A stretch of DNA of 64,000 nt from positions 62,001 through 126,000 of the IMG/VR virus record IMGVR_UViG_3300045996_002337. The stretch is one strand, 5' to 3'. The notes below the pieces were generated by a model. It searched no databases. It was not told the origin of the DNA and worked only from the letters and a program-made list of their open reading frames with translations. This document shows positions 3,949 to 50,456 of this stretch, piece after piece (positions within the stretch are counted from its first letter, which is position 1; each line of letters opens with the position of its first letter). Made by a program: the position numbers and the translations under genes.

Positions 3949-3974
3949 TCTAAACACCTCTGCTCAGGTCAAGA

Positions 3975-8075: not shown

Positions 8076-8083
8076 CCTTTTCG

Positions 8084-8090: not shown

Positions 8091-8116
8091 GTCCGAATAA
8101 CCCACTAGGATTTCAT

Positions 8117-8749: not shown

Positions 8750-8781
8750 TCGACCTTGAGGTCACACAACACGGAAGCATT

Positions 8782-10437: not shown

Positions 10438-11393
10438 TGGCAAACGTTCTCAAGCCCATCTACCTCGTTGATACCGTAGGCGAATTTGCGCGACTACCTG
10501 ATGGTGCGGTTATCAACGCCGGTGGCGTGGCAGGTCCAACTTTCTCTGTTGGTGGTAAGCCACTTCTATTTGCCGATGGGACTGCAACTGACGGCACGAC
10601 AGTTCAGCTTCCTTCGATTGATTTCCAAACTGTTTATCAGAACTCCGTTGGTGAGGCGTTCATTGATTTCACAAGTGGGAAAGATTTCATCCTCCAGGCC
10701 GTTAACGACAAGCAGTTTAGATTTGATGCAGACACTGGGCTGGTAACAATTACTGGCGACCTGGTGGTAATCGGCACCGCCACGACCGTAATTAACACTG
10801 AAATTTCATCACACAAAGTTCATATTCACCCGACAGCTGGTGACTATGTGCCCCTCTTGATTGAACCCGTTGCGGGGGTAACACCTACAGAAAACGTCGT
10901 CGATGTCAAAGTTGCATATGACGGTGCCTCTGTCTTCTGGATCAATGCAGCTGGCACAACGAATCTCCAAAATCTAACGATCACAAGCGGACAGGTTAAT
11001 GGCGTTGATATTGCTGGTCTGCAGCAACAGCTCATCGATCATGCGAATCTATCTTCAGAGTCAATTAAGCACACTGCGGCGCAGATTTCATTTGATGATA
11101 GCGAAGCTGCACCTGTTATTGGAGAGACCGTCCAAGCGGCCATTCAAAGCATCGCCACCTCATTGGCAGCCATCAATCCTAGTAACGTAACAGGATTTGA
11201 GCATGTCCAAGAAACCCCATCAACCACATGGACCGTAGTGCATGGACAAAATACCCGCAAAGCGCATGTCACGCTGTGGGATACATCTGACGAGATGATC
11301 ATGGCAGACACCGTTACAATTGCTGATGCGAACACCATTGTAATAAGGTACAACACTGCCATCGCGGGGCGAGCTGTCTTGGTGCTTTTCTAA
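10437..11393 (+). CDS. Tail fibre/appendage protein
   Basis: 'H.AAQISF' fibre motif plus C-terminal 'H.Q..PS..W.V.H' module; TAATG overlap. Confidence 0.55.
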   Translation: MANVLKPIYLVDTVGEFARLPDGAVINAGGVAGPTFSVGGKPLLFADGTATDGTTVQLPSIDFQTVYQNSVGEAFIDFTSGKDFILQAVNDKQFRFDADTGLVTITGDLVVIGTATTVINTEISSHKVHIHPTAGDYVPLLIEPVAGVTPTENVVDVKVAYDGASVFWINAAGTTNLQNLTITSGQVNGVDIAGLQQQLIDHANLSSESIKHTAAQISFDDSEAAPVIGETVQAAIQSIATSLAAINPSNVTGFEHVQETPSTTWTVVHGQNTRKAHVTLWDTSDEMIMADTVTIADANTIVIRYNTAIAGRAVLVLF

Positions 11394-11412
11394 GTAATTT
11401 GTCGTTCACTCC

Positions 11413-11419
11413 ATAAATA
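11413..11419 (+). promoter_or_regulatory. T4-type late promoter core
   Basis: ATAAATA in the intergenic gap before 11453. Confidence 0.7.
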
Positions 11420-11452
11420 GAGTGAACATCACAAAGTGCTTAAAGAGGCAAC

Positions 11453-11680
11453 ATGAAACGACATATTGAAACATCCGACATCGTGCTGGCTGCTTCGCTA
11501 AAGGTCAAGGGCTACAAGCTAGATCGCATTGAGAAGCAAGGCAACCGAGGTATCTTCTGCTTCGCGGACGTAGATGACGCCGTCCTAATTGAATTTGACC
11601 TTGGTAAATGCCTTGTCGAGCCAGTGTCTTTTAACAACGCGATTAAAGCGTTGACCACCGCCACACGCCGCATGGCCTAA
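11453..11680 (+). CDS. Small hypothetical protein (DUF5659-like)
   Basis: 'TSDIVLAASL..KGY.L...IFCF' pattern; GAGG SD. Confidence 0.5.
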   Translation: MKRHIETSDIVLAASLKVKGYKLDRIEKQGNRGIFCFADVDDAVLIEFDLGKCLVEPVSFNNAIKALTTATRRMA

Positions 11681-11715
11681 ATCTTGGTCTCTGTCTAGCA
11701 GTCTAAGGAGACACA

Positions 11716-14091: not shown

Positions 14092-14105
14092 TACATGATG
14101 CTAGG

Positions 14106-14132
14106 CTAAGGCTGGCCTTTGGCCAGCCTTAG
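14106..14132 (+). terminator. Stem-loop, probable intrinsic terminator
   Basis: CTAAGGCTGGCC-TTT-GGCCAGCCTTAG, perfect 12-bp stem after the fibre gene; weak U-tract. Confidence 0.6.
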
Positions 14133-14147
14133 ATTTGAAATTAGCCG

Positions 14148-14154
14148 ATAAATA
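14148..14154 (+). promoter_or_regulatory. T4-type late promoter core
   Basis: ATAAATA between the hairpin and ATG 14177. Confidence 0.7.
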
Positions 14155-14176
14155 GAGCACATGTACTAAGGTCACT

Positions 14177-14779
14177 ATGAAGTTTTTCGGTCACGCCAAC
14201 CTCATGCAGAATGAACTGCAACAAGCAGTCATTCCACTTGAAAATGCTTTTCCTGCCGCACCAAAGGCAGGACAGCTGGCGTTCGTCAATAAGATTCTTT
14301 ACATCTGTGTGGAAATTACAGATGGCCTACCTATCTGGGTTCCACTAACACGTGAACTTACTCTGTACACCCACGCTCAAGATGTCGCGGCCTCTACCTG
14401 GACGATCAATCATGATCTAAACACGACAGCAGTACAAGTTCAAGTTTTTGGTGTAGATGACCATTACATCGCGCCAACCGACATCGTGGTAGCAAATGCA
14501 TCGTCAATCACAGTGACATTTGGTTCTGCCGTTTCAGGACGGGCAATTGTTCTTACTGGTCACAACGACGGTAACCCAAAGCCAACCTACTCGTACATTC
14601 ATTATCAAACGGTTTCATCTAATTCGTGGGTGGTTAACCACGGCCTCGGAAGAGAGCCGATCACCCGCGTGTTCGTTGGTAATCAAGAAGTTCAACCACA
14701 GTCGATTACGCACACAACGCTTAATTCATTGACTGTGGCATTTTCACAGCCATATGTTGGCATTGTAAAGTTGGTGTAA
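14177..14779 (+). CDS. Virion protein with two 'H.Q...S..W.I.H.L' modules
   Basis: Internal duplication visible in the translation. Confidence 0.55.
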   Translation: MKFFGHANLMQNELQQAVIPLENAFPAAPKAGQLAFVNKILYICVEITDGLPIWVPLTRELTLYTHAQDVAASTWTINHDLNTTAVQVQVFGVDDHYIAPTDIVVANASSITVTFGSAVSGRAIVLTGHNDGNPKPTYSYIHYQTVSSNSWVVNHGLGREPITRVFVGNQEVQPQSITHTTLNSLTVAFSQPYVGIVKLV

Positions 14780-14780
14780 C

Positions 14781-15002
14781 ATGGCAACGCGACAAGCTAC
14801 GGTGTATAAACATATTCAGGAAACCGCTGCACTTTCCTGGGTGATCGATCATCACCTGCAGTCCTATCCTATCGTTGACGTGTACACGGAAGTCAACGGT
14901 TCGGCGGTCAAAATTCTACCAAAATCTGTCGTCTACAACACACCAAATCAGTGCACGGTGACATTTAGTCAGGCGCGATCTGGTGTTGCAACGGTGATCT
15001 AA
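14781..15002 (+). CDS. Small virion protein, single 'H.Q...W.I.H.L' module
   Basis: Paralogous to neighbouring modules. Confidence 0.55.
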   Translation: MATRQATVYKHIQETAALSWVIDHHLQSYPIVDVYTEVNGSAVKILPKSVVYNTPNQCTVTFSQARSGVATVI

Positions 15003-15003
15003 A

Positions 15004-15219
15004 ATGACGGGTGCAACCTTCTTCATCTTTACTCAAGTCACCCCCTCGACTGAGTGGACAATCACCCACAATCTAGGTCATCACCCGATCTTTGACGTTG
15101 TCATTGACGTTGATGGGGGTCGGGAAAAGGTTCTGCCATTGGCAGTCGAGCATGTTTCTGTCAATCAAACTGTTGTGCGATTTCTAGAAGCTAGAACTGG
15201 AAGTGCGCGTTTTTTCTAA
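15004..15219 (+). CDS. Small virion protein, single 'Q..PS..W.I.HNLG' module
   Basis: Paralogous to neighbouring modules. Confidence 0.55.
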   Translation: MTGATFFIFTQVTPSTEWTITHNLGHHPIFDVVIDVDGGREKVLPLAVEHVSVNQTVVRFLEARTGSARFF

Positions 15220-15243
15220 CGCAGAGGAATAGGAGATAAACAT

Positions 15244-15708
15244 ATGTGGTTCTTAAATCTGATTGGCGGCATCAAAGGCATCGCCGTAATTTTGTTGATC
15301 GTTGCTGTTGGTGCTTGGGCATTTACGCAGAAGCGCAATGTTGAAAAAGCCGAGCTTGCCCGAGATCAGGCAATCGCTGAACGTGACCAGGCGGCTGTTC
15401 AGCGCGACAAAGCTATTGAGGCAGCTAGAGTCAATGAACAAACCATTGCGAGGTTGGAGCAGGAAAAAGAGCTCGCCAACTTCGCCTTAAATACTCTTCA
15501 ACAAGCCCGCGATTCGAATCGCACCAACACGGTTACACGTGAGGTGATCATTCAAAATCAGGCTTCAGTTCCAGCGAACGCAGCTCAGGCCGCTCCGGTT
15601 CTAGGTTCAATCATTGAAGAAATACAAGCAGACCGCAATCGTCGTAGGGGTGTTCCAGCTACCACTGCATCGGGCCGTCCTGCTGCACAAAAGAGGATTT
15701 TAGAATGA
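15244..15708 (+). CDS. Inner-membrane spanin (Rz-like)
   Basis: One N-terminal TM followed by a coiled coil; directly upstream of a lipoprotein. Confidence 0.65.
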   Translation: MWFLNLIGGIKGIAVILLIVAVGAWAFTQKRNVEKAELARDQAIAERDQAAVQRDKAIEAARVNEQTIARLEQEKELANFALNTLQQARDSNRTNTVTREVIIQNQASVPANAAQAAPVLGSIIEEIQADRNRRRGVPATTASGRPAAQKRILE

Positions 15709-16157
15709 AGATGATCATTGTTCTTGCCGCCATTGCAGGTCTCGCAGGTTGCTCTACCACCGGGACGGGATTTAACAACACTGAGGTTGTCGTTCAGCGC
15801 GAGTACGTGGTGCGCACTGCACCAGACGCGCTTAAAACTCTGCCACCGCTTCCTCCAGCTTTGGCAAATCCAAAGACCGCAAGCAACACTCAAATTGGAA
15901 CGTGGATCAATAACACTGAAGAGTATGTTGCGAACCTTGAAGCAATGGTCCAAACCCTCGTGAACTTTTATGAAAAACCAGTGACTTCCGGCGAGGTGAC
16001 AGCAGCTGGTGGAATGAGAGCTGTGACGCCGCTGGCAACACCCACGCCTACAGCGGCCCGAGTTATTCAACCGCAGACAACAGCGGCGCCTATTCCTACG
16101 CCCGCCGCATCAGCGCCACGCTACTCAGATCCAATTCAACGCCTTCGTGCACAGTGA
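15705..16157 (+). CDS. Outer-membrane spanin lipoprotein (Rz1-like)
   Basis: Lipobox LAGC, Pro-rich, overlaps the Rz-like stop. Confidence 0.65.
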   Translation: MKMIIVLAAIAGLAGCSTTGTGFNNTEVVVQREYVVRTAPDALKTLPPLPPALANPKTASNTQIGTWINNTEEYVANLEAMVQTLVNFYEKPVTSGEVTAAGGMRAVTPLATPTPTAARVIQPQTTAAPIPTPAASAPRYSDPIQRLRAQ

Positions 16158-16165
16158 GGTCATAA

Positions 16166-17779
16166 ATGTCATGCTGCCCGCCAGCACCAGCAATTAACGT
16201 TGGTGGATCAGGTGATGAAGATTTCCATGCCCAGGATACCGAGATTAGGCGCGGTGAGACCGTAGAATGTTATATGCGGCGCTCTGGCAACACGACTGGG
16301 CGGATGGATGACAAGACAGAGGACATTCCAAATAAGATTCGGAACACTGACATTCCTCTTTCTGCGAATGCTACCGTAAACGTTACGTTTCGGCTTACAC
16401 CAAACTCTGATCGCGTTGCCACCTCCTGGGAATTGAAAGATGCCGATGACAACGTCATCTCAGCCTTCTCGGGCCCACCAGATGTAACCTTTACCGCGGG
16501 CGGTGTTCTATCAGGCACGTTCGCGCCAAGCTACCACGGAAAATCAATCAAAGTTAAGGTAACAGCCCGCGATGCTAATGGCGAAATTGACACGCGCGGC
16601 TTTGTGTTCTCACCAGCGGTTGCAACTGGCTCAAATAACATAAGCTTTATTCATCCATTGCCAGGTTCACGTGTAACATCAAAGTTTGGTCCTCGACGGC
16701 CGCCGGCTACAGGGGCAAGTTCACAACATGGCGGGGCAGATTTTGCGTACGCAGGTGGAAAAGTGGCTGACGTTGTCGCTGCAGCGGACGGGGAGGTAGA
16801 GTTCACCGGCTTCCAGAACGGCGGGGCGGGGAATTACGTAAAGATTCGTCACCTCAACACCGCTGGTAAACACCTGTGTACGACCGTCTACATGCACTTG
16901 AACAAGATCTATGTGACGACCGGCCAAAAGGTCGCAGCAGGCCAAAAGATTGGGCTTGAAGGCAACACTGGCGTGGGTACGGGAGCCCACTTGCACTTTG
17001 AATGCCGCCTGCCAAATGGAACTAAAATTGATCCAGTCCCACTTATCAGAGGGTCTCTAGCGGTTGCACAGCAAACCAATCCTGACAACAGCGCAGTTGA
17101 GGAATCTATTGAGACACAGGAAGCCAATAACGTCCTAACGAAGGAAAACGTTGAGGCAAAGGAGAACGGATGCGAGGCCTTTGGCCCTGAGTATCCAAAG
17201 GACCCAACTGAGACGACAGATCCGGTGCCTGTTGTTCCAATTACCGACCCGTTTGAGCGTGCATGGTTTTTCACCATGACCCATGAAGTTGGTCCGCACT
17301 GGACGACTGCTGCGCCAACCGATCCCGAAGTTTCTGCAGGCCTTATCGACACCGCCCCGCAACGTAAAAAAGTAGGGTACGTAAACACCCCCTCATACCC
17401 AGGTGGTGAAACAAAGTTCGGCATTGCGCAAGGACCCAACCCAAGCATCAATGTTAAGGGGATTGCCTACGATCCAGCAAAGCAGACAGGCTTCAATAAC
17501 TATTGGAAGCGGGGACCATCAACACTAGTTGTTCAAAAGCCAAAAACTGCCATCATGTTGTTTGACATGAACTACCTGCACGGTGTTGGTAATGCAAACG
17601 TGATTAAGGCCAATGCGGACATTGCGGACAAGACTGATGCAGAAGCAGTTGAGGCGCTTTCAGCTGCTCAACGCGCCTTCATGTTGAACATCGTTGCCAA
17701 AAATCCTCAGCGTAAAAAATATCTCAACGGTTGGCTAAAGCGGTCAGCCGAACTTCTTGCATACGTAAAAGCTCTCTAA
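16166..17779 (+). CDS. Multidomain peptidoglycan hydrolase: Ig-like + M23 peptidase + GH108-like lysozyme/PG-binding
   Basis: M23 HGGAD, YMHL, HLHFE; GH108 'THE...GGETKFGI' and 'KYLNGWLKR'. Confidence 0.8.
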   Translation: MSCCPPAPAINVGGSGDEDFHAQDTEIRRGETVECYMRRSGNTTGRMDDKTEDIPNKIRNTDIPLSANATVNVTFRLTPNSDRVATSWELKDADDNVISAFSGPPDVTFTAGGVLSGTFAPSYHGKSIKVKVTARDANGEIDTRGFVFSPAVATGSNNISFIHPLPGSRVTSKFGPRRPPATGASSQHGGADFAYAGGKVADVVAAADGEVEFTGFQNGGAGNYVKIRHLNTAGKHLCTTVYMHLNKIYVTTGQKVAAGQKIGLEGNTGVGTGAHLHFECRLPNGTKIDPVPLIRGSLAVAQQTNPDNSAVEESIETQEANNVLTKENVEAKENGCEAFGPEYPKDPTETTDPVPVVPITDPFERAWFFTMTHEVGPHWTTAAPTDPEVSAGLIDTAPQRKKVGYVNTPSYPGGETKFGIAQGPNPSINVKGIAYDPAKQTGFNNYWKRGPSTLVVQKPKTAIMLFDMNYLHGVGNANVIKANADIADKTDAEAVEALSAAQRAFMLNIVAKNPQRKKYLNGWLKRSAELLAYVKAL

Positions 17780-17780
17780 C

Positions 17781-18365
17781 ATGGCAAAAACTGCACCACT
17801 TCCATCAGTTCAAGTAAATTACCCAGTCGGTCGAACAATGATCAAGTCGGGGGATATCATCAGCTTCTTTGCTTCACACGAAGAAGGGGTGATTAAGCGT
17901 CTTGTCACACAATCGATTCTATTTTTTACAGGCTCTAGAATCTATCACACTGGTGTTGCGTTGTGGATCACGACGGACACAGGCGAACGCCGGCTCATGC
18001 TATGCGAAGCGGTTGGTGTTGGGCGCCGCCTTGTAAACTTGTCGCGCTTTCACCATCACAAGATGGAGGTCCACAGCGTTCCAAAAGAGCTCGATCAAAA
18101 AGCAATTGAAGCGTATCTCATGGATGGCATTGGAACTGGATATGGTTTTTGGACCTTGATTGCGATAGCAATTCGTGAGTTCATCGGTGTGAAGCCACCG
18201 TCAAGCAGCCGCGTTCAGGTATGCTCTGAGACCGCAGCAAGAACCTGGAGAGCAGGCGGCATGGAGTTTGAACAAACAATTTTAAGCCCTGGCAAGCTGC
18301 GAAATGTACTCTCAGAGAAGGGTGTACCACCAAGCTTTGTGATCAATCCAGACTCAGGAAATTAA
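17781..18365 (+). CDS. Permuted papain-like NlpC/P60 (YiiX/YebB-like) enzyme
   Basis: 'KSGDII', 'YHTGVA', later 'VCSE' and 'SPGKL' (His before Cys). Confidence 0.7.
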   Translation: MAKTAPLPSVQVNYPVGRTMIKSGDIISFFASHEEGVIKRLVTQSILFFTGSRIYHTGVALWITTDTGERRLMLCEAVGVGRRLVNLSRFHHHKMEVHSVPKELDQKAIEAYLMDGIGTGYGFWTLIAIAIREFIGVKPPSSSRVQVCSETAARTWRAGGMEFEQTILSPGKLRNVLSEKGVPPSFVINPDSGN

Positions 18366-18385
18366 ATTTTAACACGGAACAACAG

Positions 18386-18685
18386 ATGAGCGGCAATATT
18401 GTCAGGATCGGGGATAGCGTTAGCTGTGGGGACCATGCAGCTGTCGGGTCCGGTGATGTTCACGCCAACGGCATGCCGATTGCTCATGGTGGTAAAAGGT
18501 CAACTACAGGCCACGGATGCTTTCATCCAACTGAGTTCATTGGCCCCTGGTCAAAAACCGTTTTTGTCAATGGTGAACCAGTCGCCATCAAGGGCAAAAC
18601 AAAGATCGCGGTACATCGCTGCGGAAAGCAATGGCATGATGGGGTTGCCACCTCTGGGTCTTCAACCGTTTCAGTCGAGGAGTAA
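18386..18685 (+). CDS. PAAR-repeat spike tip protein (gp5.4-like)
   Basis: 'RIGD...CG...GS.DV.ANG.P', 'TVFVNGEPVA', conserved His/Cys. Confidence 0.8.
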   Translation: MSGNIVRIGDSVSCGDHAAVGSGDVHANGMPIAHGGKRSTTGHGCFHPTEFIGPWSKTVFVNGEPVAIKGKTKIAVHRCGKQWHDGVATSGSSTVSVEE

Positions 18686-18687
18686 AC

Positions 18688-19635
18688 ATGCCCAGTGGTC
18701 TAATGCCTTCCTACAAATATCGGCCATCTATCGCTGGAACTGAGCCAGCCATTCGTACCCGGTCCACGAGAAGGGCCCGGCTCTTCGCTGGTGGCACGTA
18801 CTTTCGCGCTAGAGATCCCGGGGTTCAAGGAAACAACATCTCAGTCGAGCTCATTGACTGGGTCTCCACACAACCTGGGGAAGAAGGAGTTCGTAAAGGT
18901 AAACTGATCGTCACGAACCATAACACAGTTTTTTCTGAGAACGTAACTGGTCCTGCAGATGTCGAGCTGCTTGAGCAAGAGCTGACGTGGAGAGAGCGAT
19001 ACGTCATCGACCAGCTAACAGGAACACCGCAAGCGCACAAATATAGCATTAGCTTACAAATAGCGCCCGCCGCAGTCCTTGAGGAGGATATCGGCCCCTT
19101 CAACTTTTCTCGCCTTTTTCACATTCCGAGTAAGCTGTCGGTAAAGCTCACCCCAAGGACCTCAGAATTCACACAAACCAGTGTGATTACGATCAAAGCA
19201 CGCACCCGGGTGTACGATTTGGTTGAAATTTCAGTGACCCCAGAGGCCGAGGAGGGGGAGCCAGCGGGCGAACCAATGACAGGGTGGGACCCTGAGGCAC
19301 TAAGGACCGCGGTTAACGCCTCAGATCCTTGGATTGAGATGATGGAGCGCAGCGGAACTGAGGGATCTGGAGGAGGTGTGCCGCTCCCAGATCTCGAAAA
19401 GCCTGACGCGCAGGACGATGGGGTAGATGATACGTTTTTGTTTGCTTTCCCAAGCACCCGCCTGGCAGGCGGTGATGGTCTCCCATTGACCCCATCAGGG
19501 GAGCGCACAGGACCAAGCCGCTCCATTGTTCATATCAACTTTGGAGAGGCCTACAACGGCAAGATGGCCGAAGTAAATGAGGTCTACGAGTGGGTAGGTG
19601 AAACGCCAGCAAATGGCGTATGGAAGCGTTACTGA
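18688..19635 (+). CDS. Hypothetical virion protein
   Basis: Last gene of the + strand structural run; converges on lolA. Confidence 0.45.
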   Translation: MPSGLMPSYKYRPSIAGTEPAIRTRSTRRARLFAGGTYFRARDPGVQGNNISVELIDWVSTQPGEEGVRKGKLIVTNHNTVFSENVTGPADVELLEQELTWRERYVIDQLTGTPQAHKYSISLQIAPAAVLEEDIGPFNFSRLFHIPSKLSVKLTPRTSEFTQTSVITIKARTRVYDLVEISVTPEAEEGEPAGEPMTGWDPEALRTAVNASDPWIEMMERSGTEGSGGGVPLPDLEKPDAQDDGVDDTFLFAFPSTRLAGGDGLPLTPSGERTGPSRSIVHINFGEAYNGKMAEVNEVYEWVGETPANGVWKRY

Positions 19636-20231
19636 CCTAGAACGTCGGCACCCTTAGGAGCCGTAAACGTAAATGTGCCATCCGGAATGGATGGATTAGT
19701 TTCCATGTTTGAGAAGGTCAGGACTGAGCGTTGCCCAAATGAATCCATGATTTCAAGAACCGCGAGCTCATTACCGCGAAATGCAACCTTCATGGCTTCA
19801 ATTGCCCCGTCATTTGATTTTGGGCGGGCGAGAACCCATTCAAGGCCGTCCTTCGGCTCCAGGTTCTGCAGCACAAATTCCTTCTCGATGTTGCCACCCG
19901 AGAGAATGACTGCAGGTGTGGAGCCGAGGACCGCGCCCAGATCTCGCACTGTCACTTGGTTCAGGTCAGCATCATACAGGTATACCTTCTTGCCATCAGC
20001 AACCATGGTTTGATTGAAGGGTTTGGTGTAGACGAACTTGAACTTGTTCGGGCGCGAGAATTCAAAGGTTCCAGAAGAGGTCTTTCTTTTACCATTTGGT
20101 GACACAACCGTTTGAGAGAAGTCTGCTTTGCCCGTTTTTGCTGTTTGGGCAAAACTTTTCAAGGTGGTCACCGCTTCAGCATTCGCTAGCAGCGGAGCTG
20201 CTGCTAGAACAATCATCGTTAAAAATTTCAT
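19629..20231 (-). CDS. lolA: Outer-membrane lipoprotein chaperone LolA
   Basis: Start moved to 20231 (signal peptide MKFLTMIVLAAAPLLANA); 'ADFSQTV', 'SGTFEFSRPNKF', 'VADGK..YLYDADLNQVT', 'STPA', 'D.FGQ', 'FTFTAPKGADV'. Confidence 0.9.
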   Translation of the reverse strand: MKFLTMIVLAAAPLLANAEAVTTLKSFAQTAKTGKADFSQTVVSPNGKRKTSSGTFEFSRPNKFKFVYTKPFNQTMVADGKKVYLYDADLNQVTVRDLGAVLGSTPAVILSGGNIEKEFVLQNLEPKDGLEWVLARPKSNDGAIEAMKVAFRGNELAVLEIMDSFGQRSVLTFSNMETNPSIPDGTFTFTAPKGADVLGQ

Positions 20232-20872
20232 TCGAACCAATCCGTGTATGAGCCAGGGAAGCCATCTGGCTGATAGAGCCACATGCCGCCATCAGCGGTG
20301 TTGAGCTTCAATGAAAACTTAAGTTGCTCGAGTGACCCGACCAAAACCGGCGAAACCGCGGTAATGAAGTGTGGGCCAGCAGGGAAGATTACCAAGGTGC
20401 CGCGCTGTGGGACTAGGCTAAAATTATATGCTGGAAATTCAAGCTTACCACCATATACTTCATGACGCGGGTCAAGTGGCACTCCACCACCAAAGTCTTT
20501 AAGCCAAAGGTAACAAACCAGATCTACGTCTTTTACCTTGACCCACTTCTTTCGAAGAAACTTTGAATTCTCGCATCCGTGCACTTCGCACGGGTGTTTT
20601 GGATCTTCAAAGTACTGTTGAAAGCGGGGCTTATCCATGCCCTTAATGATACCACGGAAGCGAGATTGAATGTCGCCCCCATGCTCAAGCAACGCCTGTT
20701 GCAGTAGTTCAATGAGCGGCTCTTCTGAAACGATACGCTCATTTTTTACTGGCCGCCCATCTTCTGCAATTGAAGGAACCTTGATGCCGTACTCTGCAAT
20801 GATTCTTTCGCAATTGGCGGGGGAGATGAACTCCTCTACCACATGAAACGGGCTATGTGTATGTTGTGTCAT
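20228..20872 (-). CDS. 2OG-Fe(II) oxygenase-fold protein (prolyl-4-hydroxylase-like), possibly degenerate
   Basis: 'YGGKLEFP...P.RGTLVIFP...V.PV..G' double-stranded beta-helix signature. Confidence 0.7.
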   Translation of the reverse strand: MTQHTHSPFHVVEEFISPANCERIIAEYGIKVPSIAEDGRPVKNERIVSEEPLIELLQQALLEHGGDIQSRFRGIIKGMDKPRFQQYFEDPKHPCEVHGCENSKFLRKKWVKVKDVDLVCYLWLKDFGGGVPLDPRHEVYGGKLEFPAYNFSLVPQRGTLVIFPAGPHFITAVSPVLVGSLEQLKFSLKLNTADGGMWLYQPDGFPGSYTDWFE

Positions 20873-20873
20873 T

Positions 20874-21458
20874 TCACTTTACTTGGAACATGTCAATGAT
20901 GTCATCACCGACCATGAGTTGGGCCTTCTCTGCCTGCTCAACGGGAAGCTCAATTGATGTCGAGTGGCGATTAACACTGATGCTCAACCGCTGTGACGGT
21001 GCCTTAACATCCGCTGGCCAAAACGAGAAAATGCTTTCATTGAGGTTGTAGGTCATCTTAGCTTCACCAACCAGGCGCTCAACGCGGAGCACGCTTGTTG
21101 GCTGCTTGACACGAACAGCTTCGATGAGTTCACCGTCTACCGTAACTTGACCAAGGGACTCAAAATTGAAGTCGTCACCTGAGACATCGATGTCATCACC
21201 GGCGTCTGCGTCATCAGCAGCTTGCTCGCTATCGGCTGGTTCACCATCAGCGTCGTCAACTTCAGAGCCGGGAGAGAACGCATAACCGGGGCCGAAGCCA
21301 TATGCGTTAGGTCCAAGAAGGCCGAGCACAATGTGCAGCAAAGACTTTGGTGTTGGTTCTTCAACGTCAACGTCATGGCCAGCACCACGCAGCATCTTCA
21401 CAGCGTCGTCAACATCAGATTTTACGTCGCTAGGTGCGACAATAACAATTTTTGCCAT
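20874..21458 (-). CDS. Hypothetical protein with acidic linker
   Basis: In the late operon 21906-19629. Confidence 0.5.
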   Translation of the reverse strand: MAKIVIVAPSDVKSDVDDAVKMLRGAGHDVDVEEPTPKSLLHIVLGLLGPNAYGFGPGYAFSPGSEVDDADGEPADSEQAADDADAGDDIDVSGDDFNFESLGQVTVDGELIEAVRVKQPTSVLRVERLVGEAKMTYNLNESIFSFWPADVKAPSQRLSISVNRHSTSIELPVEQAEKAQLMVGDDIIDMFQVK

Positions 21459-21468
21459 CTTGATTTCC

Positions 21469-21906
21469 TTATTTGAGACCGGCTAGAGCGCGGAAGCGGG
21501 CTGTGGAAACACCACCCTCTTGTACTGGCTTCTTCGCCTCTACGATTGAAACTGGAGTGGTCGACTTGGCGTCATTCGCCATCTTCATGCGATCTACGCC
21601 GATGCGCTTTACAACTTGAAACGTCTCAGTACGACCAGAATCTGGGCAAACAATGCCCACTGAAAATACTACGTCAAATGCAACGATCGCGGAATCGTTG
21701 GCATATGAAACAGGGTTGATGCTGTTTGCGAAAACGGAGATGTGGCTGGGGTCCAGCGCTGCAACCGTTGGTGCTCCAATAACAATAGAGGCATCTACGA
21801 CATCTCCATCTGGCACAGTGATTGGCACTTCAGCCGCTGGCAGCGATGCATAGTTAGCGCCTGCATTGGCGTAGCTGTCATCCATTTCTTTGATTTCTGG
21901 GTTCAT
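21469..21906 (-). CDS. Hypothetical late protein
   Basis: GGAG SD; late promoter at 21931; ends 'FRALAGLK'. Confidence 0.5.
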   Translation of the reverse strand: MNPEIKEMDDSYANAGANYASLPAAEVPITVPDGDVVDASIVIGAPTVAALDPSHISVFANSINPVSYANDSAIVAFDVVFSVGIVCPDSGRTETFQVVKRIGVDRMKMANDAKSTTPVSIVEAKKPVQEGGVSTARFRALAGLK

Positions 21907-21930
21907 TATGACTCCTAAATTCAGACAGTC

Positions 21931-21937
21931 TATTTAT
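21931..21937 (-). promoter_or_regulatory. T4-type late promoter core
   Basis: ATAAATA on the minus strand, 24 nt before ATG 21906. Confidence 0.65.
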
Positions 21938-22602
21938 GCCGTTGCCAGGGTCTTGGCCCAGAAGGCATCTACCCGTTTCCCAAGTTCTTCATAATGGTCA
22001 ACAAGTGTAACCACAAATTCCATTGGAAAACCTGTGTCTGCCACCATTAAGATGACGCCAGTTTGGATGTCAGTGCCAAACATTTCATTGTGCGCGATGG
22101 CGTAAAATGTCAACTGCAGCTCGTAATCTGAGATGTCCTTGCGGTTCTTGATTCGCGAGGCTGTCTTGAAGTCAACAATGCAGGGGATTCCCTTGTATTG
22201 TCCAACGAGGTCGCAACGACCCGCAACTTCAAGTGTCTCAGAATAGAGAGCAACCTCTTGCCCCCACACTTGGTCTACCTTGTTTAACTTTAGCTTAAGC
22301 GCGTTGAACGAATTCAAATCTGCCTGAGGAACAGGTTTGCCACCGATAGGAGCATCAACCTGTTCTTTCTTAAGATAACGTTCAGCTAGCAAGTGAACGT
22401 TGGTTCCTCGATCAGTCGCCTTCTTAGACACCTCTGCAGCTTTAGCGTGCCCTAGGGCGTTGCGCCAATTTTCAAGAGAGGCTGCTTTTTCCGGAGGTTC
22501 AGTGCCACCTAACACGGTGGTGATTGACGGATAAAATCCTTTTGGGCAATCATACCATCGCCCGTTGTGGGTTACGGTGGTTAGCTCTGGGTATTCAAAC
22601 AT
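21934..22602 (-). CDS. PD-(D/E)xK exonuclease (Cas4/RecB-like phage nuclease)
   Basis: 'YPSITTVL', 'RGTNVH', 'AGRCD', 'IVDFKT', 'YELQL..YA'. Confidence 0.8.
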   Translation of the reverse strand: MFEYPELTTVTHNGRWYDCPKGFYPSITTVLGGTEPPEKAASLENWRNALGHAKAAEVSKKATDRGTNVHLLAERYLKKEQVDAPIGGKPVPQADLNSFNALKLKLNKVDQVWGQEVALYSETLEVAGRCDLVGQYKGIPCIVDFKTASRIKNRKDISDYELQLTFYAIAHNEMFGTDIQTGVILMVADTGFPMEFVVTLVDHYEELGKRVDAFWAKTLATA

Positions 22603-22612
22603 GGTGCTTTCG

Positions 22613-23224
22613 TTAGGCGCTGAGCGTCTTTATAATTTCTTCAGACCAGTCTGTGTACAGTGGAACCGCAAAGTATTCCGCGCATTGAATCATAATTTCA
22701 TTTCCAGAATCAATGGCGTCTATGAAATTCTTGTCGGTGTATTTGAGCTTAGATAGGTATTTGTCAGCGGCTTCGGCTTCGGCGGCTTCAACGTTCGCGC
22801 CTTTACTGGCCGCGCCGCGCATGGCCTGAATAATTGCCTGGTCAAGCCCGGTTTGAAAGAACAGATCAGATACATCAGGCGACCAGAGAAATTCAAACGA
22901 GCCGATTGGGAAAATTGCGTGAACTCGCCCATAGGTCTGCGCGTCAACAAGTTCGCCGGTTGCAAATAGCGCAGCACTTCGCCCGTTAATGCCAAATTGT
23001 TGCTGAAACCAAGCGTCAACCAGTTCGTGCACTTTCTGGCTCGAGCTTTTTGGGCGACGGTCAATTCTAACTTCTTTGCGCAAAAACTCCGACTGAGGAT
23101 TCTTCAGACCACGATAAATGAGTCCACCTTGGGCCGCCCTCAGGAACGGTGCGCACTCTTCATTAATCATTTCAATGATCTTGGCCGCGTCTGTTTCGCT
23201 CTCAAACAATTCTCGAATTTTCAT
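22613..23224 (-). CDS. Putative internal head protein, possible ADP-ribosyltransferase fold
   Basis: Leader MKIRELFE; 'LIYRG', 'ALFAT', 'GNEIMI' resemble R-S/T-E ART motifs. Confidence 0.45.
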   Translation of the reverse strand: MKIRELFESETDAAKIIEMINEECAPFLRAAQGGLIYRGLKNPQSEFLRKEVRIDRRPKSSSQKVHELVDAWFQQQFGINGRSAALFATGELVDAQTYGRVHAIFPIGSFEFLWSPDVSDLFFQTGLDQAIIQAMRGAASKGANVEAAEAEAADKYLSKLKYTDKNFIDAIDSGNEIMIQCAEYFAVPLYTDWSEEIIKTLSA

Positions 23225-23895
23225 CTTTTTGCTTTGTTCATTCGCGTTAGACGCTTGCTTAATGATTTCTTGCGTGTGCGCTTCGACTTCAAAACGCGGA
23301 TGATCTTCTTCCGACGTCCTGCAATAGAGAGCTTCATGCGTGTCGATGCTTTAGCGCGCGGCTTGTAGGCCGTCTTGATGTTAGCAACGACACGACCTTT
23401 ACGGTATCCCGACGTTACTCGGAATCCCTTCTTGATCTTTTTACCAGAACGACGAAATGCAGCCTTCACTGCCTCATCAACTAGTTCAATTGTAACATCA
23501 TCGGTTGGCGGTTCATCCTCGGCTTCAGGTTCGCCCTCCTCAATGCCGAGCTCCTTCAGTGTATCCATGTCAAGAACTACACCTGAAGGATACACATCAT
23601 CGTTGACACGCGTTAGGACAATTGAATCTTCCGTAGGTTCAACCAGAACGACCTTGCCGTTCTGGTCCTTAATCTCCCCAGGTTCGCCGTCCTCAGCGAT
23701 GTCGAAGAACTTCTGAAGCTGAACGTTGTCAATCTTCAATTGGAAGCCATCGCAAGAGAGGATCAAACCATGATTGGCGAGGTGACCAACGGACCACCCA
23801 GCAGGAACCGTAGGTCCAACTTCAGGAGAGGCTTGCGCCTCTCCGTCTGTTGAAGGCTCTTCAATCTCTTTTGAGACTTCCTTTAGAAGATTCAC
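23221..23895 (-). CDS. Prohead core protein-like (acidic N-part, very basic C-tail)
   Basis: Likely GTG start 23895 overlapping the upstream stop (MNLLKEV); basic tail 'RRSGKKIKKGFRVTSGYRKGRVVA...' like T4-group prohead core proteins. Confidence 0.5.
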   Translation of the reverse strand: MNLLKEVSKEIEEPSTDGEAQASPEVGPTVPAGWSVGHLANHGLILSCDGFQLKIDNVQLQKFFDIAEDGEPGEIKDQNGKVVLVEPTEDSIVLTRVNDDVYPSGVVLDMDTLKELGIEEGEPEAEDEPPTDDVTIELVDEAVKAAFRRSGKKIKKGFRVTSGYRKGRVVANIKTAYKPRAKASTRMKLSIAGRRKKIIRVLKSKRTRKKSLSKRLTRMNKAKR

Positions 23896-26819
23896 AGCGA
23901 AGCTTTCACCAGTGCGTTGTACTCGGACTTGGTAACGCGATGCTTCTTGAACCATGCCTTGTTTTCTTCCCAGTCGCCACCAGAATCATAGCCATCCTTT
24001 TCAAGCTTAGCGAGATAGGTGTCCATGCCAGCGGCCGAACCGCCGAGGAACAACGCGCGAACTGCGCGAGCTGAACCATTAGTTGACTGTTGAATCTTGG
24101 ACAGCACTGCTTCAACATCTACCTTAGCTTCATTCAGATCTTCGTTAGCTTGTTCAGGCTGGCCACCACGTGGAGCAGTGTTCTTAGAAAGAACGTCTTG
24201 CAGTCGACCGATGAGGGTCAGTACCTGCGCGCGGTTACGAAGCTCAGCCTTGCGTGTGCGCAGCGACTGCACGATCTGTGTACGGCGACGTTGGAGTACA
24301 TCGTCTGGAATGCCCAGAGCGGAGACGAGACCAACAACTGCTTGCGCGAAGTCGTCGTTACCAACGTCAAGGGCTTCTTTGAGTGGGGGTGCTTTGTTAA
24401 GCTTCACGACCTTATGATCGTCCAGGCCTTCACCGTCGATTTCGTCTTGGGCATCTTGCTTGGTATCAAATGGACCATCGTAGTAGTCGCCATCGTATGT
24501 CACGATGTAATAACCTGGGCCCTCACGATTTTCTTTGAGGCCAGAGAGCTTCTTGCCTTCCGAAACCGGCTTCATCGCGTCAGACGACTTAACACCTAGA
24601 CGGGTTGCCAGCAGACGCAGCGCACGTTCAAGATTTGAATCCTGCTCGATGAGCTCAGCGGTGCGATACACGCCAGTACCAACTGCAGATGGACCACCAG
24701 TGGTGATCAGTGATTCTGGAAGACCCAGTTCTACGAGAACGGTTTCAAACAGCTTCTGAATGAACGAACCACGCTTCTGGCGAGGAGCTTCAGTGAGCTT
24801 GGCTTCACTAACTTTGGCCGTCTTGATCCAACCAGTCGACCCATCCCATTCGCCGACGCCCTTTGTGGAGCCACGCTTGAACGGCTTGTCACCGACCAAA
24901 GCATTGGCGATGTCCTCGTCGCCATCAAGCCAGTGGCCAGGGTGGGCCTTCTTTAGAGCGCGCTTCCAGGCTGCGAACGACGTGTATTCCTGGTTGCCAT
25001 CTGCATCTTTAGCTTCATTTGTTTGCTCAGCTGGTGGTGCGTAGCCCTTGGCATTTGCAAGGCCCTCATACAGCGACATGAATGCGCGACGGACAGAGAC
25101 CTTCTTGCGGAGCATATCAGCAGCACTGGAGATTGTTGACTCAACGTCTTCAGTGTTTAGGTAACGACCTGGAACGCCCGCCATTACGTGGAAAGCGATC
25201 AAGCGCTTTGCGAATGGGAGCTTGAGCTTAGCGGTCAGGGCGCGTGCTTGGCTGTCAAGCGGAATGTTGAAGCCGTCCTTGACGCCATCACGATCTTCGC
25301 CAGGAGCCTCTTGCAGAACGCGGGCGAGGAATTTGGAACCAATTGTTGTCATGTTATTCTCCTGTTCAATATCCTCTTTTTTGAGGCGGGTTAGTTTTTT
25401 GCCGTGCTTTTCCTTGGTGAGCTTCTTATCACCACGCATTACGTACTCTTCGCCTTCATTGTCCTCAATGTAGACTACATTGTTTGGACCCTCTACCATC
25501 GCGGCGATGTGAAGACCCTTACCTGTCATTGCCTTGATGGCAGCAGCTTGAGAAGGAGAGTCTGCTTCTTGCTCCTTGGCCTCATTTGTGCGAGACGTTG
25601 GGACGATGTCGAATGTCAAGTCCTTGTACTTTGCCTGATCACCCATCTCTTCGATCCACTGTTCGCAATTATCGTATGAACCTTCATAGTAGATGCGACC
25701 CTTTGTCTCATCTGCTTTGACGCGATAGGTGCCCTTGGCCTCGTTCATGCGTTTTTTGGCGCGATCAGTTAGCAGATCAGGATTTTGATTGATCAAATCC
25801 GCCATGTCATCCTCATCCAGCGACGCAAAGCCAAACTCGCCATATTCATCTTCAGCCATCTTATTTGCTCGCTTAATGTCGATGTAATCTTCCATGTCAT
25901 CTTCATCAAGCCCCGAGAATCCGAATTCGCCGTGATGCTCTTTTGCGATGTAGTTCAGCTGCGCCCACGGCGTTTTGCCCTTAGCATTGAGCGCCTCCTT
26001 CACGGGCTCATCCTCATCTTCAACTGGCTCTGCTGGTGCCGCCTTCTTTTTCTTTTTCTTCTTAGGCTTGCCGTCTTCGTCAGTCTCGTCCTCTTCACTT
26101 GACCCTTCGTCAGAGGCTTCCTCATCTCCAGCTTCATCTTCTGCGGCTGCAGCGGCAATTTCGTCCTCTACTTCAGCTTGAGGATCGGCTTTCTTTTTAG
26201 GAGCCTCTTCCTCCTCGGAGTCATCACTAGCAACAACGTCAAAGTTGTCATCAGCAAAATCATCGCCGATTTCAAGATCTTCGGTGTCATCGAGTTCAAG
26301 GTCAGCGTCAGGATCGGCATCGCCCTCCTCGTCTTCAGAACGAGGCCATACGACGTCAACGATGTCAAACTCAGTCGTAAGGCGGTTGATGGCTTCCTCG
26401 ATGTCATCCTCGAGGCCGAGCATGTTCTTCATGGCCTCTTCAAACTTGTCGGCTTGCTCGGCGTTGACATAGACCTTAACGATCTGGCCGTCATCGGTTT
26501 CAAGCCCGAACGGGACGGTGTCGATCTCGTCATTGAGTTCCTCAGCGCGCTCGATATAGTTTGCTACATCGGAACCACTCACTACACCGTTCGAGTTAAT
26601 GGTGTTGCGCATCAAGCTGAAGGCAATGTCAGTGCTCGCGCCTGCCTTATCGGCGACGTCGTTGGTTCCAGCGTCAGTGGCATCCGATTTCTTGAGAAGC
26701 TGCTGCGTGTTGCTCAGCTCCTTAAGAAGGCTTGACTGAGACTGAGATTCCTGTTGAACGGGTGCGACAGTAGGGGTCTCAGCGATTGATTGTGTGTTGA
26801 TGGTCTTTAGAAGACTCAT
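23892..26819 (-). CDS. Large acidic probable head-internal polyprotein
   Basis: 975 aa; repeated hydrophobic-x-E-A/G junctions, acidic tract, internal repeats, internal SD+ATG at 25352. Confidence 0.55.
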   Translation of the reverse strand: MSLLKTINTQSIAETPTVAPVQQESQSQSSLLKELSNTQQLLKKSDATDAGTNDVADKAGASTDIAFSLMRNTINSNGVVSGSDVANYIERAEELNDEIDTVPFGLETDDGQIVKVYVNAEQADKFEEAMKNMLGLEDDIEEAINRLTTEFDIVDVVWPRSEDEEGDADPDADLELDDTEDLEIGDDFADDNFDVVASDDSEEEEAPKKKADPQAEVEDEIAAAAAEDEAGDEEASDEGSSEEDETDEDGKPKKKKKKKAAPAEPVEDEDEPVKEALNAKGKTPWAQLNYIAKEHHGEFGFSGLDEDDMEDYIDIKRANKMAEDEYGEFGFASLDEDDMADLINQNPDLLTDRAKKRMNEAKGTYRVKADETKGRIYYEGSYDNCEQWIEEMGDQAKYKDLTFDIVPTSRTNEAKEQEADSPSQAAAIKAMTGKGLHIAAMVEGPNNVVYIEDNEGEEYVMRGDKKLTKEKHGKKLTRLKKEDIEQENNMTTIGSKFLARVLQEAPGEDRDGVKDGFNIPLDSQARALTAKLKLPFAKRLIAFHVMAGVPGRYLNTEDVESTISSAADMLRKKVSVRRAFMSLYEGLANAKGYAPPAEQTNEAKDADGNQEYTSFAAWKRALKKAHPGHWLDGDEDIANALVGDKPFKRGSTKGVGEWDGSTGWIKTAKVSEAKLTEAPRQKRGSFIQKLFETVLVELGLPESLITTGGPSAVGTGVYRTAELIEQDSNLERALRLLATRLGVKSSDAMKPVSEGKKLSGLKENREGPGYYIVTYDGDYYDGPFDTKQDAQDEIDGEGLDDHKVVKLNKAPPLKEALDVGNDDFAQAVVGLVSALGIPDDVLQRRRTQIVQSLRTRKAELRNRAQVLTLIGRLQDVLSKNTAPRGGQPEQANEDLNEAKVDVEAVLSKIQQSTNGSARAVRALFLGGSAAGMDTYLAKLEKDGYDSGGDWEENKAWFKKHRVTKSEYNALVKASL

Positions 26820-29158: not shown

Positions 29159-29164
29159 GGCAAA

Positions 29165-50285: not shown

Positions 50286-50456
50286 CTAGAAGCACATTGT
50301 GTAGCGAAGCTTTTTACCACGAATACCGATTCGGTCTTGACAGCCATTCTTTTCACTGATGACCCAATAGAGCGAAGGGCGCCCGCTCTTTGGTTCAGCT
50401 TTCATGGTCGAACAACCAGTGAGAAACAAGATCGAAAGGCAAATAAGCAGCTTCAT
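50286..50456 (-). CDS. Small lipoprotein (56 aa)
   Basis: MKLLICLSILFLTGC lipobox; AGGAG SD; GTAAATA at 50480-50486. Confidence 0.65.
   Translation of the reverse strand: MKLLICLSILFLTGCSTMKAEPKSGRPSLYWVISEKNGCQDRIGIRGKKLRYTMCF

What the first reader, a model, noticed from the sequence alone, without database searches (positions are those of the whole stretch)
19629..21937. Phage-encoded LolA at the end of a late operon, near the o-spanin
Seen: a full-length LolA with signal peptide, ATGA-coupled as the last gene of the operon from the late promoter at 21931. The window also has two late lipoproteins (15705-16157, 50286-50456). Known: LolA ferries lipoproteins from LolCDE to LolB, and o-spanins must reach the outer membrane. 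Inference: the phage supplies its own lipoprotein-trafficking chaperone for lysis or receptor-blocking lipoproteins, or to maintain the envelope after host shut-off. This is an unusual auxiliary gene for a phage.
Basis: partly seen in the sequence, partly recalled or inferred. Interest (0 to 1): 0.7.

Follow-up and report, generated by a model that had tools for sequence, protein, structure and literature searches.

The report
Jumbo phage carries a LolA gene
A 350-kb phage carries an intact copy of LolA, the bacterial carrier that ferries lipoproteins to the outer membrane, tacked onto the end of a conserved late operon; this is rare among phages and suggests the phage boosts delivery of its own roughly ten lipoproteins, including its lysis spanin.

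Summary
Window 19629-20231 (-) encodes a 200-aa LolA. It matches Pfam LolA at 2.3e-40, has a Sec signal peptide (ANA|EA), and keeps the residues equivalent to E. coli R43, P44 and F47. The alignment-based AlphaFold model matches solved LolA structures at TM 0.8-0.86.

Its ATG overlaps the stop of the upstream gene (ATGA). It is the last of four tightly packed genes behind a CATAAATA motif. In this genome that motif precedes tail sheath, tube, adaptor and fibre genes, and the phage has a T4 gp55-like sigma factor.

The gene came from a Burkholderiales (Sphaerotilaceae/Comamonadaceae-type) LolA at 49-59% identity. Its composition is now phage-like (GC3 52% versus 87% in cellular lolA).

Thirty-eight related phage loci keep the flanking synteny, and most keep the promoter motif, but none has lolA. 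Every "phage" LolA hit in INPHARED is a piece of host chromosome.

A contig from another metagenome bridges the lolA junction and differs only by synonymous changes, so this is not an assembly chimera.

The phage encodes about ten lipoproteins, including an i-/o-spanin pair 3.5 kb away.

The likely role is extra Lol capacity late in infection. This is inferred, not shown. It is a new member of a known family in a rare setting.

The parts
19629..20231 (-). lolA, 200 aa: periplasmic outer-membrane lipoprotein carrier protein
   Evidence: Pfam LolA 2.3e-40. PDB LolA hits down to 1e-33. AF2 model pLDDT 85, with Foldseek top 38 hits all LolA at TM 0.8-0.86. R60, P61 and F64 align with E. coli R43, P44 and F47.
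20178..20231 (-). Sec signal peptide (residues 1-18, MKFLTMIVLAAAPLLANA, cleavage before EA); no lipobox
   Evidence: Read directly from the sequence, in register with homologues' signal peptides.
20228..20231 (-). ATGA overlap: start of lolA and stop of the 214-aa gene (translational coupling)
   Evidence: A contig from run X1 (20102-20321) bridges it at 99% identity.
20228..20872 (-). 214-aa core gene of this phage group, 2OG-Fe(II)-oxygenase-like (lead only)
   Evidence: No Pfam or PHROG hit. Atlas feature hits at 0.94-0.97 to viral 2OG-FeII_Oxy_3 clusters. Homologues at 40-77% identity in 38 viral contigs.
20874..21458 (-). 194-aa acidic protein of unknown function, conserved in the closer relatives
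21469..21906 (-). 145-aa protein of unknown function, first gene behind the late motif
21931..21938 (-). CATAAATA, T4-type late-promoter-like motif, 32 nt before ATG 21906
   Evidence: Motif enrichment. The same motif stands before tail sheath, tube, adaptor and fibre genes. The phage has a gp55-like sigma. The motif is conserved at this position in 15 of 17 related loci.
21934..22602 (-). PD-(D/E)XK exonuclease, the upstream neighbour; its stop lies inside the motif
   Evidence: PF12705 4.8e-08 and phrog_298 1.6e-51.
18688..19635 (+). convergent 315-aa gene, last gene of the rightward block (follows the PAAR gene); its 3' end overlaps the lolA 3' end by 7 nt
   Evidence: Conserved in relatives.
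15244..15708 (+). i-spanin candidate: N-terminal transmembrane helix followed by a coiled coil
   Evidence: Translation. ATGA overlap with the next gene.
15705..16157 (+). o-spanin candidate: 150-aa Pro-rich lipoprotein (LAG|CSTT)
   Evidence: Weak hit to phrog_4719, Rz-like spanin, E 4e-4.
16166..17779 (+). 537-aa muralytic protein (M23 peptidase + GH108 + PG_binding_3) next to the spanin pair
50286..50456 (-). 56-aa lipoprotein (LTG|CSTM) with GGTAAATAT 31 nt upstream

Best explanation
The gene is a functional orthologue of the bacterial periplasmic carrier LolA. An ancestor of this jumbo phage captured it from a Burkholderiales host of the Sphaerotilaceae/Comamonadaceae type. It was inserted at the variable junction between two convergent modules, directly behind a conserved late operon.

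The gene is transcribed from the gp55-type late promoter at 21938-21931, and possibly also by read-through from upstream. It is translated by coupling to the 214-aa gene, exported by Sec and cleaved after ANA.

In the periplasm it would take triacylated lipoproteins from the host LolCDE (or LolDF) complex and hand them to host LolB. This would add carrier capacity at the time the phage makes its own lipoproteins. There are about ten of these: the o-spanin, three glycine-zipper/17-kDa-antigen-type outer-membrane lipoproteins, and others.

Shown: the gene's identity, intactness, origin, position, promoter type, rarity and the cargo inventory. Inferred: export, docking on the host machinery, which cargo it carries and any fitness benefit.
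For: Identity and fold.

Constraint:
- The phage protein keeps 53 of 61 columns that are at least 90% conserved in 78 cellular LolAs. All 8 changes are conservative, and there are no insertions.
- The residues equivalent to R43, P44 and F47 are kept.
- All 3 SNPs in lolA in an independent run are synonymous.

Origin:
- The best hits are cellular LolAs in ftsK-lolA-rarA context at 55-59% identity.
- The tree places the gene inside the Sphaerotilaceae+Comamonadaceae clade, excluding Ralstonia, with SH-aLRT 87.

Long residence in the phage: GC is 49% and GC3 52%, like phage genes, against 66% and 87% in cellular lolA.

Late expression.

Cargo:
- About ten lipobox proteins are predicted, none with Asp at +2.
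- They include outer-membrane-lipoprotein domains and a spanin pair.
- The same CATAAATAG or TATAAATA motif stands before the SBP lipoprotein and the three-gene lipoprotein cluster.

Dependence on the host machinery: the phage has no LolB, LspA, Lgt or LolC/E-type domain, so it must use the host's.
Against: - No expression data exist; no RNA run holds the region.
- 38 syntenic relatives and 5 related large genomes manage without lolA, so it is dispensable for this phage type.
- The host is unknown, so compatibility with its LolCDE and LolB is untested.
- The terminal branch is about five times the median. Changes at conserved columns cluster in the lid helices, which could mean altered rather than conserved behaviour.
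- The complex prediction with a Rubrivivax LolB gave no answer.
Confidence: 0.55

Rival explanations
1. Traffic hijack or sabotage. The phage LolA competes with host LolA at LolCDE. It either favours phage lipoproteins or fails to deliver host cargo to LolB. The outer membrane is then starved of Lpp, BamD and LptE-type lipoproteins, which weakens the envelope or blocks receptor renewal (superinfection exclusion).
For: The terminal branch is long, 1.18 against a median of 0.24. Four of 8 conserved lid columns (residues 98-118) are changed, against 4 of 53 elsewhere; Fisher p is 0.007, with the region chosen post hoc. The lid gates the cargo cavity (established LolA structural knowledge).
Against: The Arg and Phe whose mutation gives the known transfer-defective (R43L) and LolC-trapping (F47E) phenotypes in E. 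coli are kept. All changes at conserved sites are conservative. Late timing is a poor fit for superinfection exclusion.
Confidence: 0.15
2. Envelope upkeep. The carrier mainly keeps host lipoproteins flowing after host gene expression is shut off during a long jumbo-phage latent period, so the cell stays intact until lysis.
For: This rests on the same identity and constraint evidence as the best explanation. The phage also encodes other envelope proteins: a secreted PBP7-like DD-endopeptidase and SlyB-like lipoproteins.
Against: The late-promoter placement puts the gene alongside phage lipoprotein genes rather than early genes. Host shut-off is not demonstrated for this phage.
Confidence: 0.2
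3. Neutral passenger. This is a captured host gene with no role in infection, awaiting loss.
For: It occupies a slot that holds unrelated cargo in relatives and is unique to this phage.
Against: - Composition is fully ameliorated, which implies long residence.
- The ORF is intact and 87% of conserved columns are kept with conservative changes.
- Only synonymous SNPs are seen.
- Packing is seamless, with a 4-nt overlap upstream and a 7-nt overlap downstream.
Confidence: 0.07
4. Assembly chimera or host contamination: the lolA segment does not belong to the phage.
For: None was found. The only ground is that the nearest homologues are cellular.
Against: - Both flanks are phage core genes in conserved synteny.
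- Coding overlaps exist at both ends.
- GC3 is phage-like, not host-like.
- There is no ftsK or rarA nearby.
- A contig from a different wastewater run bridges the lolA/214-aa-gene junction with one mismatch, and a soil run holds a lolA piece.
Confidence: 0.02

Closest known systems
Cellular LolA of Burkholderiales (Caldimonas, Piscinibacter, Rubrivivax, Rhizobacter, Aquabacterium; ftsK-lolA-rarA locus)
   Same: Same length with no insertions, the same signal-peptide register and the same Pfam domain. All 50 columns invariant in the 36-sequence alignment are shared. Identity is 49-59%.
   Different: It is encoded in a phage late operon rather than next to ftsK and rarA. GC3 is 52% against 87%. 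Its branch is about five times longer. Conservative changes are concentrated in the lid helices.
Solved LolA structures (Xanthomonas 8ORN, P. aeruginosa 2W7Q, E. coli 1IWL/6F3Z/7Z6W)
   Same: The predicted fold matches at TM 0.75-0.86: an open beta-barrel with a helical lid. R43, P44 and F47 of E. coli are conserved.
   Different: Identity is 23-36%. No structure or biochemistry exists for the phage protein.
LolA-superfamily relatives with other jobs (LolB, RseB, DUF2092/NE2245, LolA3)
   Same: They share the half-barrel fold.
   Different: They match much more weakly (TM about 0.5, identity 11-14%). The phage protein is an orthologue of housekeeping LolA, not one of these.
Bifunctional LolA of bacteria that lack LolB (own knowledge of the literature, not tested against a sequence here)
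   Same: Both are LolA-family carriers.
   Different: The phage protein has no extra loop or insertion relative to LolB-dependent Burkholderiales LolAs. Candidate host lineages do have LolB.
T4-type late transcription (gp55 sigma, TATAAATA promoters)
   Same: The motif NATAAATA lies 30-42 nt before starts of virion genes, and the phage has a gp55 homologue.
   Different: The first base is mostly C rather than T. The gp55 match is weak (31% identity, E 1.3e-7). No transcript mapping is available.

Membership tests
LolA (outer-membrane lipoprotein carrier, PF03548) | Sequence matches the family profile above the curated threshold over its full length | tested here: met
   138.5 bits against a cut-off of 23.6, profile positions 2-165 of 165. 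14 PDB LolA sequences match at E of 1e-33 to 1e-6.
LolA (outer-membrane lipoprotein carrier, PF03548) | Soluble periplasmic protein: cleavable Sec signal peptide and no lipobox | tested here: met
   MKFLTMIVLAAAPLLANA|EA, aligned with homologues' signal peptides. There is no Cys after the h-region. This is by sequence only; export was not measured.
LolA (outer-membrane lipoprotein carrier, PF03548) | Incomplete beta-barrel with a helical lid | tested here: met
   AF2 model with a 36-sequence alignment: pLDDT 85, 11 strands plus three short helices at residues 98-118. Foldseek TM is 0.80-0.86 to LolA structures. This is a prediction, not a structure.
LolA (outer-membrane lipoprotein carrier, PF03548) | Conserved Arg-Pro and Phe of the beta2 region (E. 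coli R43, P44, F47) | tested here: met
   R60, P61 and F64 are invariant in the 36-sequence alignment and align with the E. coli residues.
LolA (outer-membrane lipoprotein carrier, PF03548) | Accepts lipoproteins from LolCDE and delivers them to LolB | not testable with these tools
   The complex prediction with Rubrivivax LolB gave no answer. This needs biochemistry or complementation.
Two-component spanin (i-spanin + o-spanin) | Adjacent or overlapping genes: a type II membrane protein with a periplasmic coiled coil, and a small outer-membrane lipoprotein | tested here: met
   15244-15708 has an N-terminal transmembrane helix and a coiled coil. 15705-16157 has lipobox LAG|C and is Pro-rich. 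The genes overlap by ATGA and lie next to a muralytic gene.
Two-component spanin (i-spanin + o-spanin) | Sequence membership in a known spanin family; function in outer-membrane disruption | tested here: inconclusive
   Only a weak hit to phrog_4719, Rz-like spanin, at E 4e-4. The i-spanin candidate has no hit. At 150 aa the lipoprotein is long for an o-spanin.
T4-type late promoter | TATAAATA-like box upstream of late (virion) genes, with a gp55-type sigma encoded by the phage | tested here: met
   35 of 47 motif sites lie within 80 nt upstream of a start. Eight of the 10 motif-preceded genes scanned hit virion families, including sheath, tube, adaptor and fibres. A gp55 homologue matches at E 1.3e-7. 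The motif is conserved at this site in 15 of 17 relatives.
T4-type late promoter | Transcription start mapped a few bases downstream, late in infection | not testable with these tools
   No RNA run holds this phage.

The most novel reading that the evidence does not exclude
The phage LolA is a specialised carrier rather than spare capacity. Its altered lid would let it outcompete host LolA at LolCDE and give priority to phage lipoproteins (spanin, SlyB-like proteins). The host outer membrane would be starved of its own lipoproteins. This would be a viral takeover of an envelope-biogenesis pathway.
Probability: 0.12. Interest if true: 0.75.

Novelty: new member of a known kind. Interest (0 to 1): 0.55.

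Why it matters
Lipoprotein trafficking is essential for Gram-negative envelopes and is a drug target. Phage lysis depends on it, because o-spanins must reach the outer membrane.

A phage that carries its own LolA suggests carrier capacity can limit late infection. That idea is directly testable. The gene also provides a naturally diverged LolA, with lid changes, for studying cargo handling.

It also extends the list of host pathways that jumbo phages supplement. I found no paper describing a phage-encoded LolA in six full-text searches. The library searched is incomplete, so this is not proof of novelty.

Tried and rejected
- Single-sequence AlphaFold model: pLDDT 49.7, unusable. It was replaced by the alignment-based model.
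- Megablast of 19000-23000 against INPHARED: no match.
- IMG/VR pattern scans with the phage LolA and with the LolA alignment: no viral relative found.
- The 8 INPHARED tblastn hits looked like phage LolAs, but each one examined was host chromosome. Ralstonia 'phage' YO079_2 and MT837408 carry ftsK (and rarA) beside lolA. Acinetobacter 'phage' MD-2021a has rplU-rpmA-lolA-serS.
- Contigs P0057 (332 kb) and P0002 (101 kb) were checked as possible phages. Both are bacterial.
- Literature searches returned only author names, the 'LOLA' grant and 'lolalign'.
- Atlas search on the 194-aa gene: nothing usable.
- Homologue search with the S11 peptidase gave no taxon names, so it did not help assign a host.
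- Complex prediction of mature phage LolA with Rubrivivax gelatinosus LolB: no answer, score 0.16 against a mark of 0.34. This is no evidence either way.
- Other lipoprotein-pathway genes were looked for in the phage (LolB, LspA, Lgt, MacB/LolC periplasmic domain). None was found.
Full report
SETTING. The window is bases 62001-126000 of a 349,660-bp viral record rated 97% complete. Its DnaB-type helicase is most like those of Ralstonia phage RsoM2USA, Vibrio phage 2.275.O, Xanthomonas phages XaC1 and XacN1, and the Rak2-like giant myoviruses, at 29-37% identity. The phage is therefore a distant member of that jumbo-phage assemblage. Bases 1-19635 form a rightward block holding virion proteins, a spanin pair, an M23/GH108 muralytic protein and a PAAR protein. 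From about 34 kb down to 19629 runs a leftward block holding primase, DnaB helicase, two large unknown proteins and a PD-(D/E)XK exonuclease. It ends with four small genes, the last of which is the LolA gene.

THE OBSERVATION. The ORF at 19629-20231 (-) encodes 200 aa and matches Pfam LolA over the whole profile (E 2.3e-40, 138.5 bits, cut-off 23.6). It also matches phrog_25624, a PHROG of 'unknown function'. The ATG at 20231 gives MKFLTMIVLAAAPLLANA|EA, a standard Sec signal peptide in register with those of cellular homologues. This ATG overlaps the TGA of the upstream 214-aa gene, forming ATGA at 20231-20228. The four genes 21906 to 19629 are separated by 10, 1 and -4 nt, and no minus-strand terminator-like site lies between 23500 and 18500. 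At its other end, the lolA stop overlaps the stop of the convergent 315-aa gene by 7 nt.

IS IT A REAL LolA? By sequence it hits 14 solved LolA proteins and nothing else. The best are Xanthomonas (1e-33) and P. aeruginosa (6e-26). A single-sequence AlphaFold model was poor. A model built with a 36-sequence alignment reached pLDDT 85. Its top 38 Foldseek hits in the PDB are all LolA, with TM by target of 0.75-0.86. LolB, RseB and other superfamily members score about 0.5. The residues equivalent to E. coli R43, P44 and F47 are R60, P61 and F64, and they are invariant in the alignment. I compared the phage protein with 78 distinct cellular homologues. It keeps 53 of the 61 columns that are at least 90% conserved. 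The eight changes are all conservative: R>K, I>M, W>Y, A>V twice, L>I, A>S and G>A. There are no insertions and only two deleted positions. Cellular members keep 97% of such columns on average, with a minimum of 90%, so the phage copy is somewhat more diverged but clearly constrained.

WHERE IT CAME FROM. In a search of 5.8 billion protein clusters, the best non-self hits are 53-59% identical. Those that carry a source name are from Caldimonas, Aquincola, Aquabacterium, Albitalea and Burkholderiaceae. The two long contigs I inspected are bacterial and show the canonical ftsK-lolA-rarA arrangement. A scan of one genome per species returned 80 loci at 49-59% identity. Nearly all are Sphaerotilaceae or Comamonadaceae. 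A quick maximum-likelihood tree (LG+C20+F+G4, SH-aLRT support only) places the phage protein inside that clade to the exclusion of Ralstonia (support 87). Its position within the clade is unresolved. Its terminal branch is 1.18, against a median of 0.24. The gene's GC is 49% and its GC3 is 52%, which fits the phage (mean GC3 56%, sd 7). Cellular lolA genes have 66% GC and 87% GC3. The capture is therefore old, or the gene has evolved fast in the phage. The likely host range is Burkholderiales of this group; this is an inference.

NOT A CHIMERA, AND RARE. Homologues of the 214-aa gene occur in 38 IMG/VR contigs at 40-77% identity. In these contigs the order p244-(p203)-exonuclease-p145-p194-p214, facing the convergent p315-PAAR-p194-M23 block, is largely kept. 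None has a LolA at E 1e-4 or better. In many of them the 214-aa gene ends about 20 nt from the convergent gene. In others the gap holds unrelated ORFs, so this is a variable cargo slot. Five related large genomes, three of them at least 98% complete, have no PF03548 match anywhere. Two pattern scans of 2.9 million IMG/VR contigs found no LolA relative. INPHARED gave 8 tblastn hits. Those I examined are host DNA filed as phage: ftsK and rarA flank lolA in Ralstonia 'phage' YO079_2, ftsK flanks it in MT837408, and rplU-rpmA-lolA-serS appear in Acinetobacter 'phage' MD-2021a. The other four Ralstonia YO records have identical hit statistics. The phage genome itself has no ftsK or rarA. Low-depth contigs from a wastewater run (X1) lie on lolA at 99% identity or better. 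One of them (20102-20321) bridges the ATGA junction, and a soil run holds another lolA piece. X1 differs from the window at three lolA positions, and all three changes are synonymous. X1 is therefore a different strain, and the few changes seen are silent.

THE PROMOTER. The 8-mer CATAAATA is the most enriched word upstream of genes: 20 of its 25 genomic copies are in upstream regions. Of 47 [C/T/A]ATAAATA sites, 35 lie within 80 nt upstream of a start on the same strand, usually 30-42 nt before it; about 3 would be expected by chance. I scanned ten genes that follow this motif or its CTAAATA variant. Eight hit virion families, including tail sheath, tail tube, head-tail adaptor, tail fibres and head decoration. 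The phage encodes a homologue of T4 gp55, the late sigma factor (E 1.3e-7). The copy at 21938-21931 is 32 nt before the 145-aa gene. A matching motif sits at the same place in 15 of 17 related loci that lack lolA. So lolA was appended to a pre-existing, conserved late operon. One caveat applies. A -10-like GTTACAAT lies at 23496 and no terminator intervenes, so earlier transcription by read-through is possible.

POSSIBLE CARGO. A lipobox scan finds about ten credible phage lipoproteins. None has Asp at +2, the E. coli inner-membrane retention signal (own knowledge). They are:
- the Pro-rich 150-aa protein at 15705-16157. It overlaps by ATGA a gene for a membrane-anchored coiled-coil protein (15244-15708) and precedes the M23/GH108 protein, which makes an i-/o-spanin pair by architecture, with one weak Rz-like hit;
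- the 56-aa protein at 50286-50456 (-);
- three proteins with glycine-zipper or 17-kDa-antigen outer-membrane-lipoprotein domains above Pfam thresholds;
- an SBP_bac_3 lipoprotein;
- four others with no family match above threshold.
The SBP gene has the identical CATAAATAG 37 nt upstream. Three tandem lipoprotein genes (two of the domain-bearing ones plus an 85-aa gene with no family match) sit behind TATAAATA. The phage has no LolB, LspA, Lgt or LolC/E-type periplasmic domain. Any function therefore runs through the host machinery.

MECHANISM AND RIVALS. The best reading is a working LolA that adds carrier capacity when phage lipoproteins are made. This rests on identity, constraint, timing signals and the cargo inventory. 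Export, docking, cargo choice and benefit are all inferred. A hijack or dominant-negative role is less likely because R60 and F64 are kept. However, changes at conserved columns do cluster in the lid helices: 4 of 8 there against 4 of 53 elsewhere, p 0.007, with the region chosen post hoc. The long branch also leaves room for altered cargo handling. Upkeep of host lipoproteins after shut-off cannot be separated from the main reading with these data. A neutral passenger is unlikely, and an assembly artefact is effectively excluded.

COMPARISON AND VERDICT. This gene is a member of the LolA family by every testable criterion, in a setting where I could find no other bona fide example. I rate it a new member of a known kind. 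It is of moderate to good interest because it makes a specific and testable claim: lipoprotein trafficking can limit late phage development.

Noticed in passing
whole genome G000:C1; in the window e.g. 32191 (-), 38404 (-), 44627 (-): Of 54 GTTAYAAT (-10-like) motifs, 21 are followed by ATG exactly 5 or 6 nt later (3.7 expected), and 18 of these open ORFs of 69-414 codons. This looks like a class of early promoters that produce leaderless mRNAs.
   Followed up: partly
G000:C1:46353-46658 (-), locus L146 (outside the window): A homologue of T4 gp55, the late sigma factor: 31% identity over residues 4-116, E 1.3e-7.
   Followed up: partly
related loci, e.g. L089:6636-7598, L093:6639-7876, L102:6615-9762: The junction after the 214-aa gene is a variable cargo slot. 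Relatives carry unrelated ORFs there, or nothing; only this phage has lolA.
   Followed up: partly
G000:C1:191675-192902 (-) and 147920-148213 (-), outside the window: Three tandem lipoprotein genes sit behind a TATAAATA motif, and two of them have Gly-zipper_Omp or 17kDa_Anti_2 domains. A fourth glycine-zipper lipoprotein lies elsewhere. These SlyB-like outer-membrane lipoproteins are unusual cargo for a phage.
   Followed up: partly
window 48511-49299 (-): A secreted 262-aa Peptidase_S11 protein with an SxxK motif. Sources name its homologues PBP7-type D-Ala-D-Ala endopeptidase (45-56% identity). It is another envelope-acting gene.
   Followed up: partly
window 20228-20872 (-): The gene coupled to lolA has no Pfam or PHROG hit but resembles viral 2OG-Fe(II) oxygenase/prolyl-hydroxylase clusters by language-model features (0.94-0.97). 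It is a core gene found in 38 related contigs.
   Followed up: partly
window 19629-20231, protein residues 98-118: Phage-specific changes at otherwise conserved LolA columns cluster in the lid helices (A101V, A108V, L109I, A111S). The count is 4 of 8 there against 4 of 53 elsewhere, in a post hoc test.
   Followed up: partly
window 19678-19694 (+): A terminator-like hairpin followed by a T-rich run lies on the plus strand, just after the convergent 315-aa gene. It falls inside the 3' end of the lolA coding sequence.
   Followed up: no
window 16166-18685 (+): A 537-aa protein that combines M23 peptidase, GH108 and PG_binding_3 domains is followed by a 194-aa gene and a PAAR-motif protein. The arrangement is conserved in relatives.
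   Followed up: no
window 23892-26819 (-) and 26829-29129 (-): Two large proteins (975 and 766 aa) have no PHROG hit. The first has long acidic and lysine-rich low-complexity tracts. The second is preceded by a late-type motif at 29159.
   Followed up: no
INPHARED records ON170132.1, CAKLQH020000002.1, MT837408.1 (loci L086, L087, L144): These records are filed as phages but carry bacterial housekeeping loci (ftsK-lolA-rarA; rplU-rpmA-lolA-serS). They inflate apparent counts of 'phage LolA'.
   Followed up: yes
locus L021 (CALRRO020000008.1): A MAG labelled Chitinophaga pinensis carries a lolA that groups tightly with Piscinibacter. The bin is probably mislabelled or contaminated.
   Followed up: no
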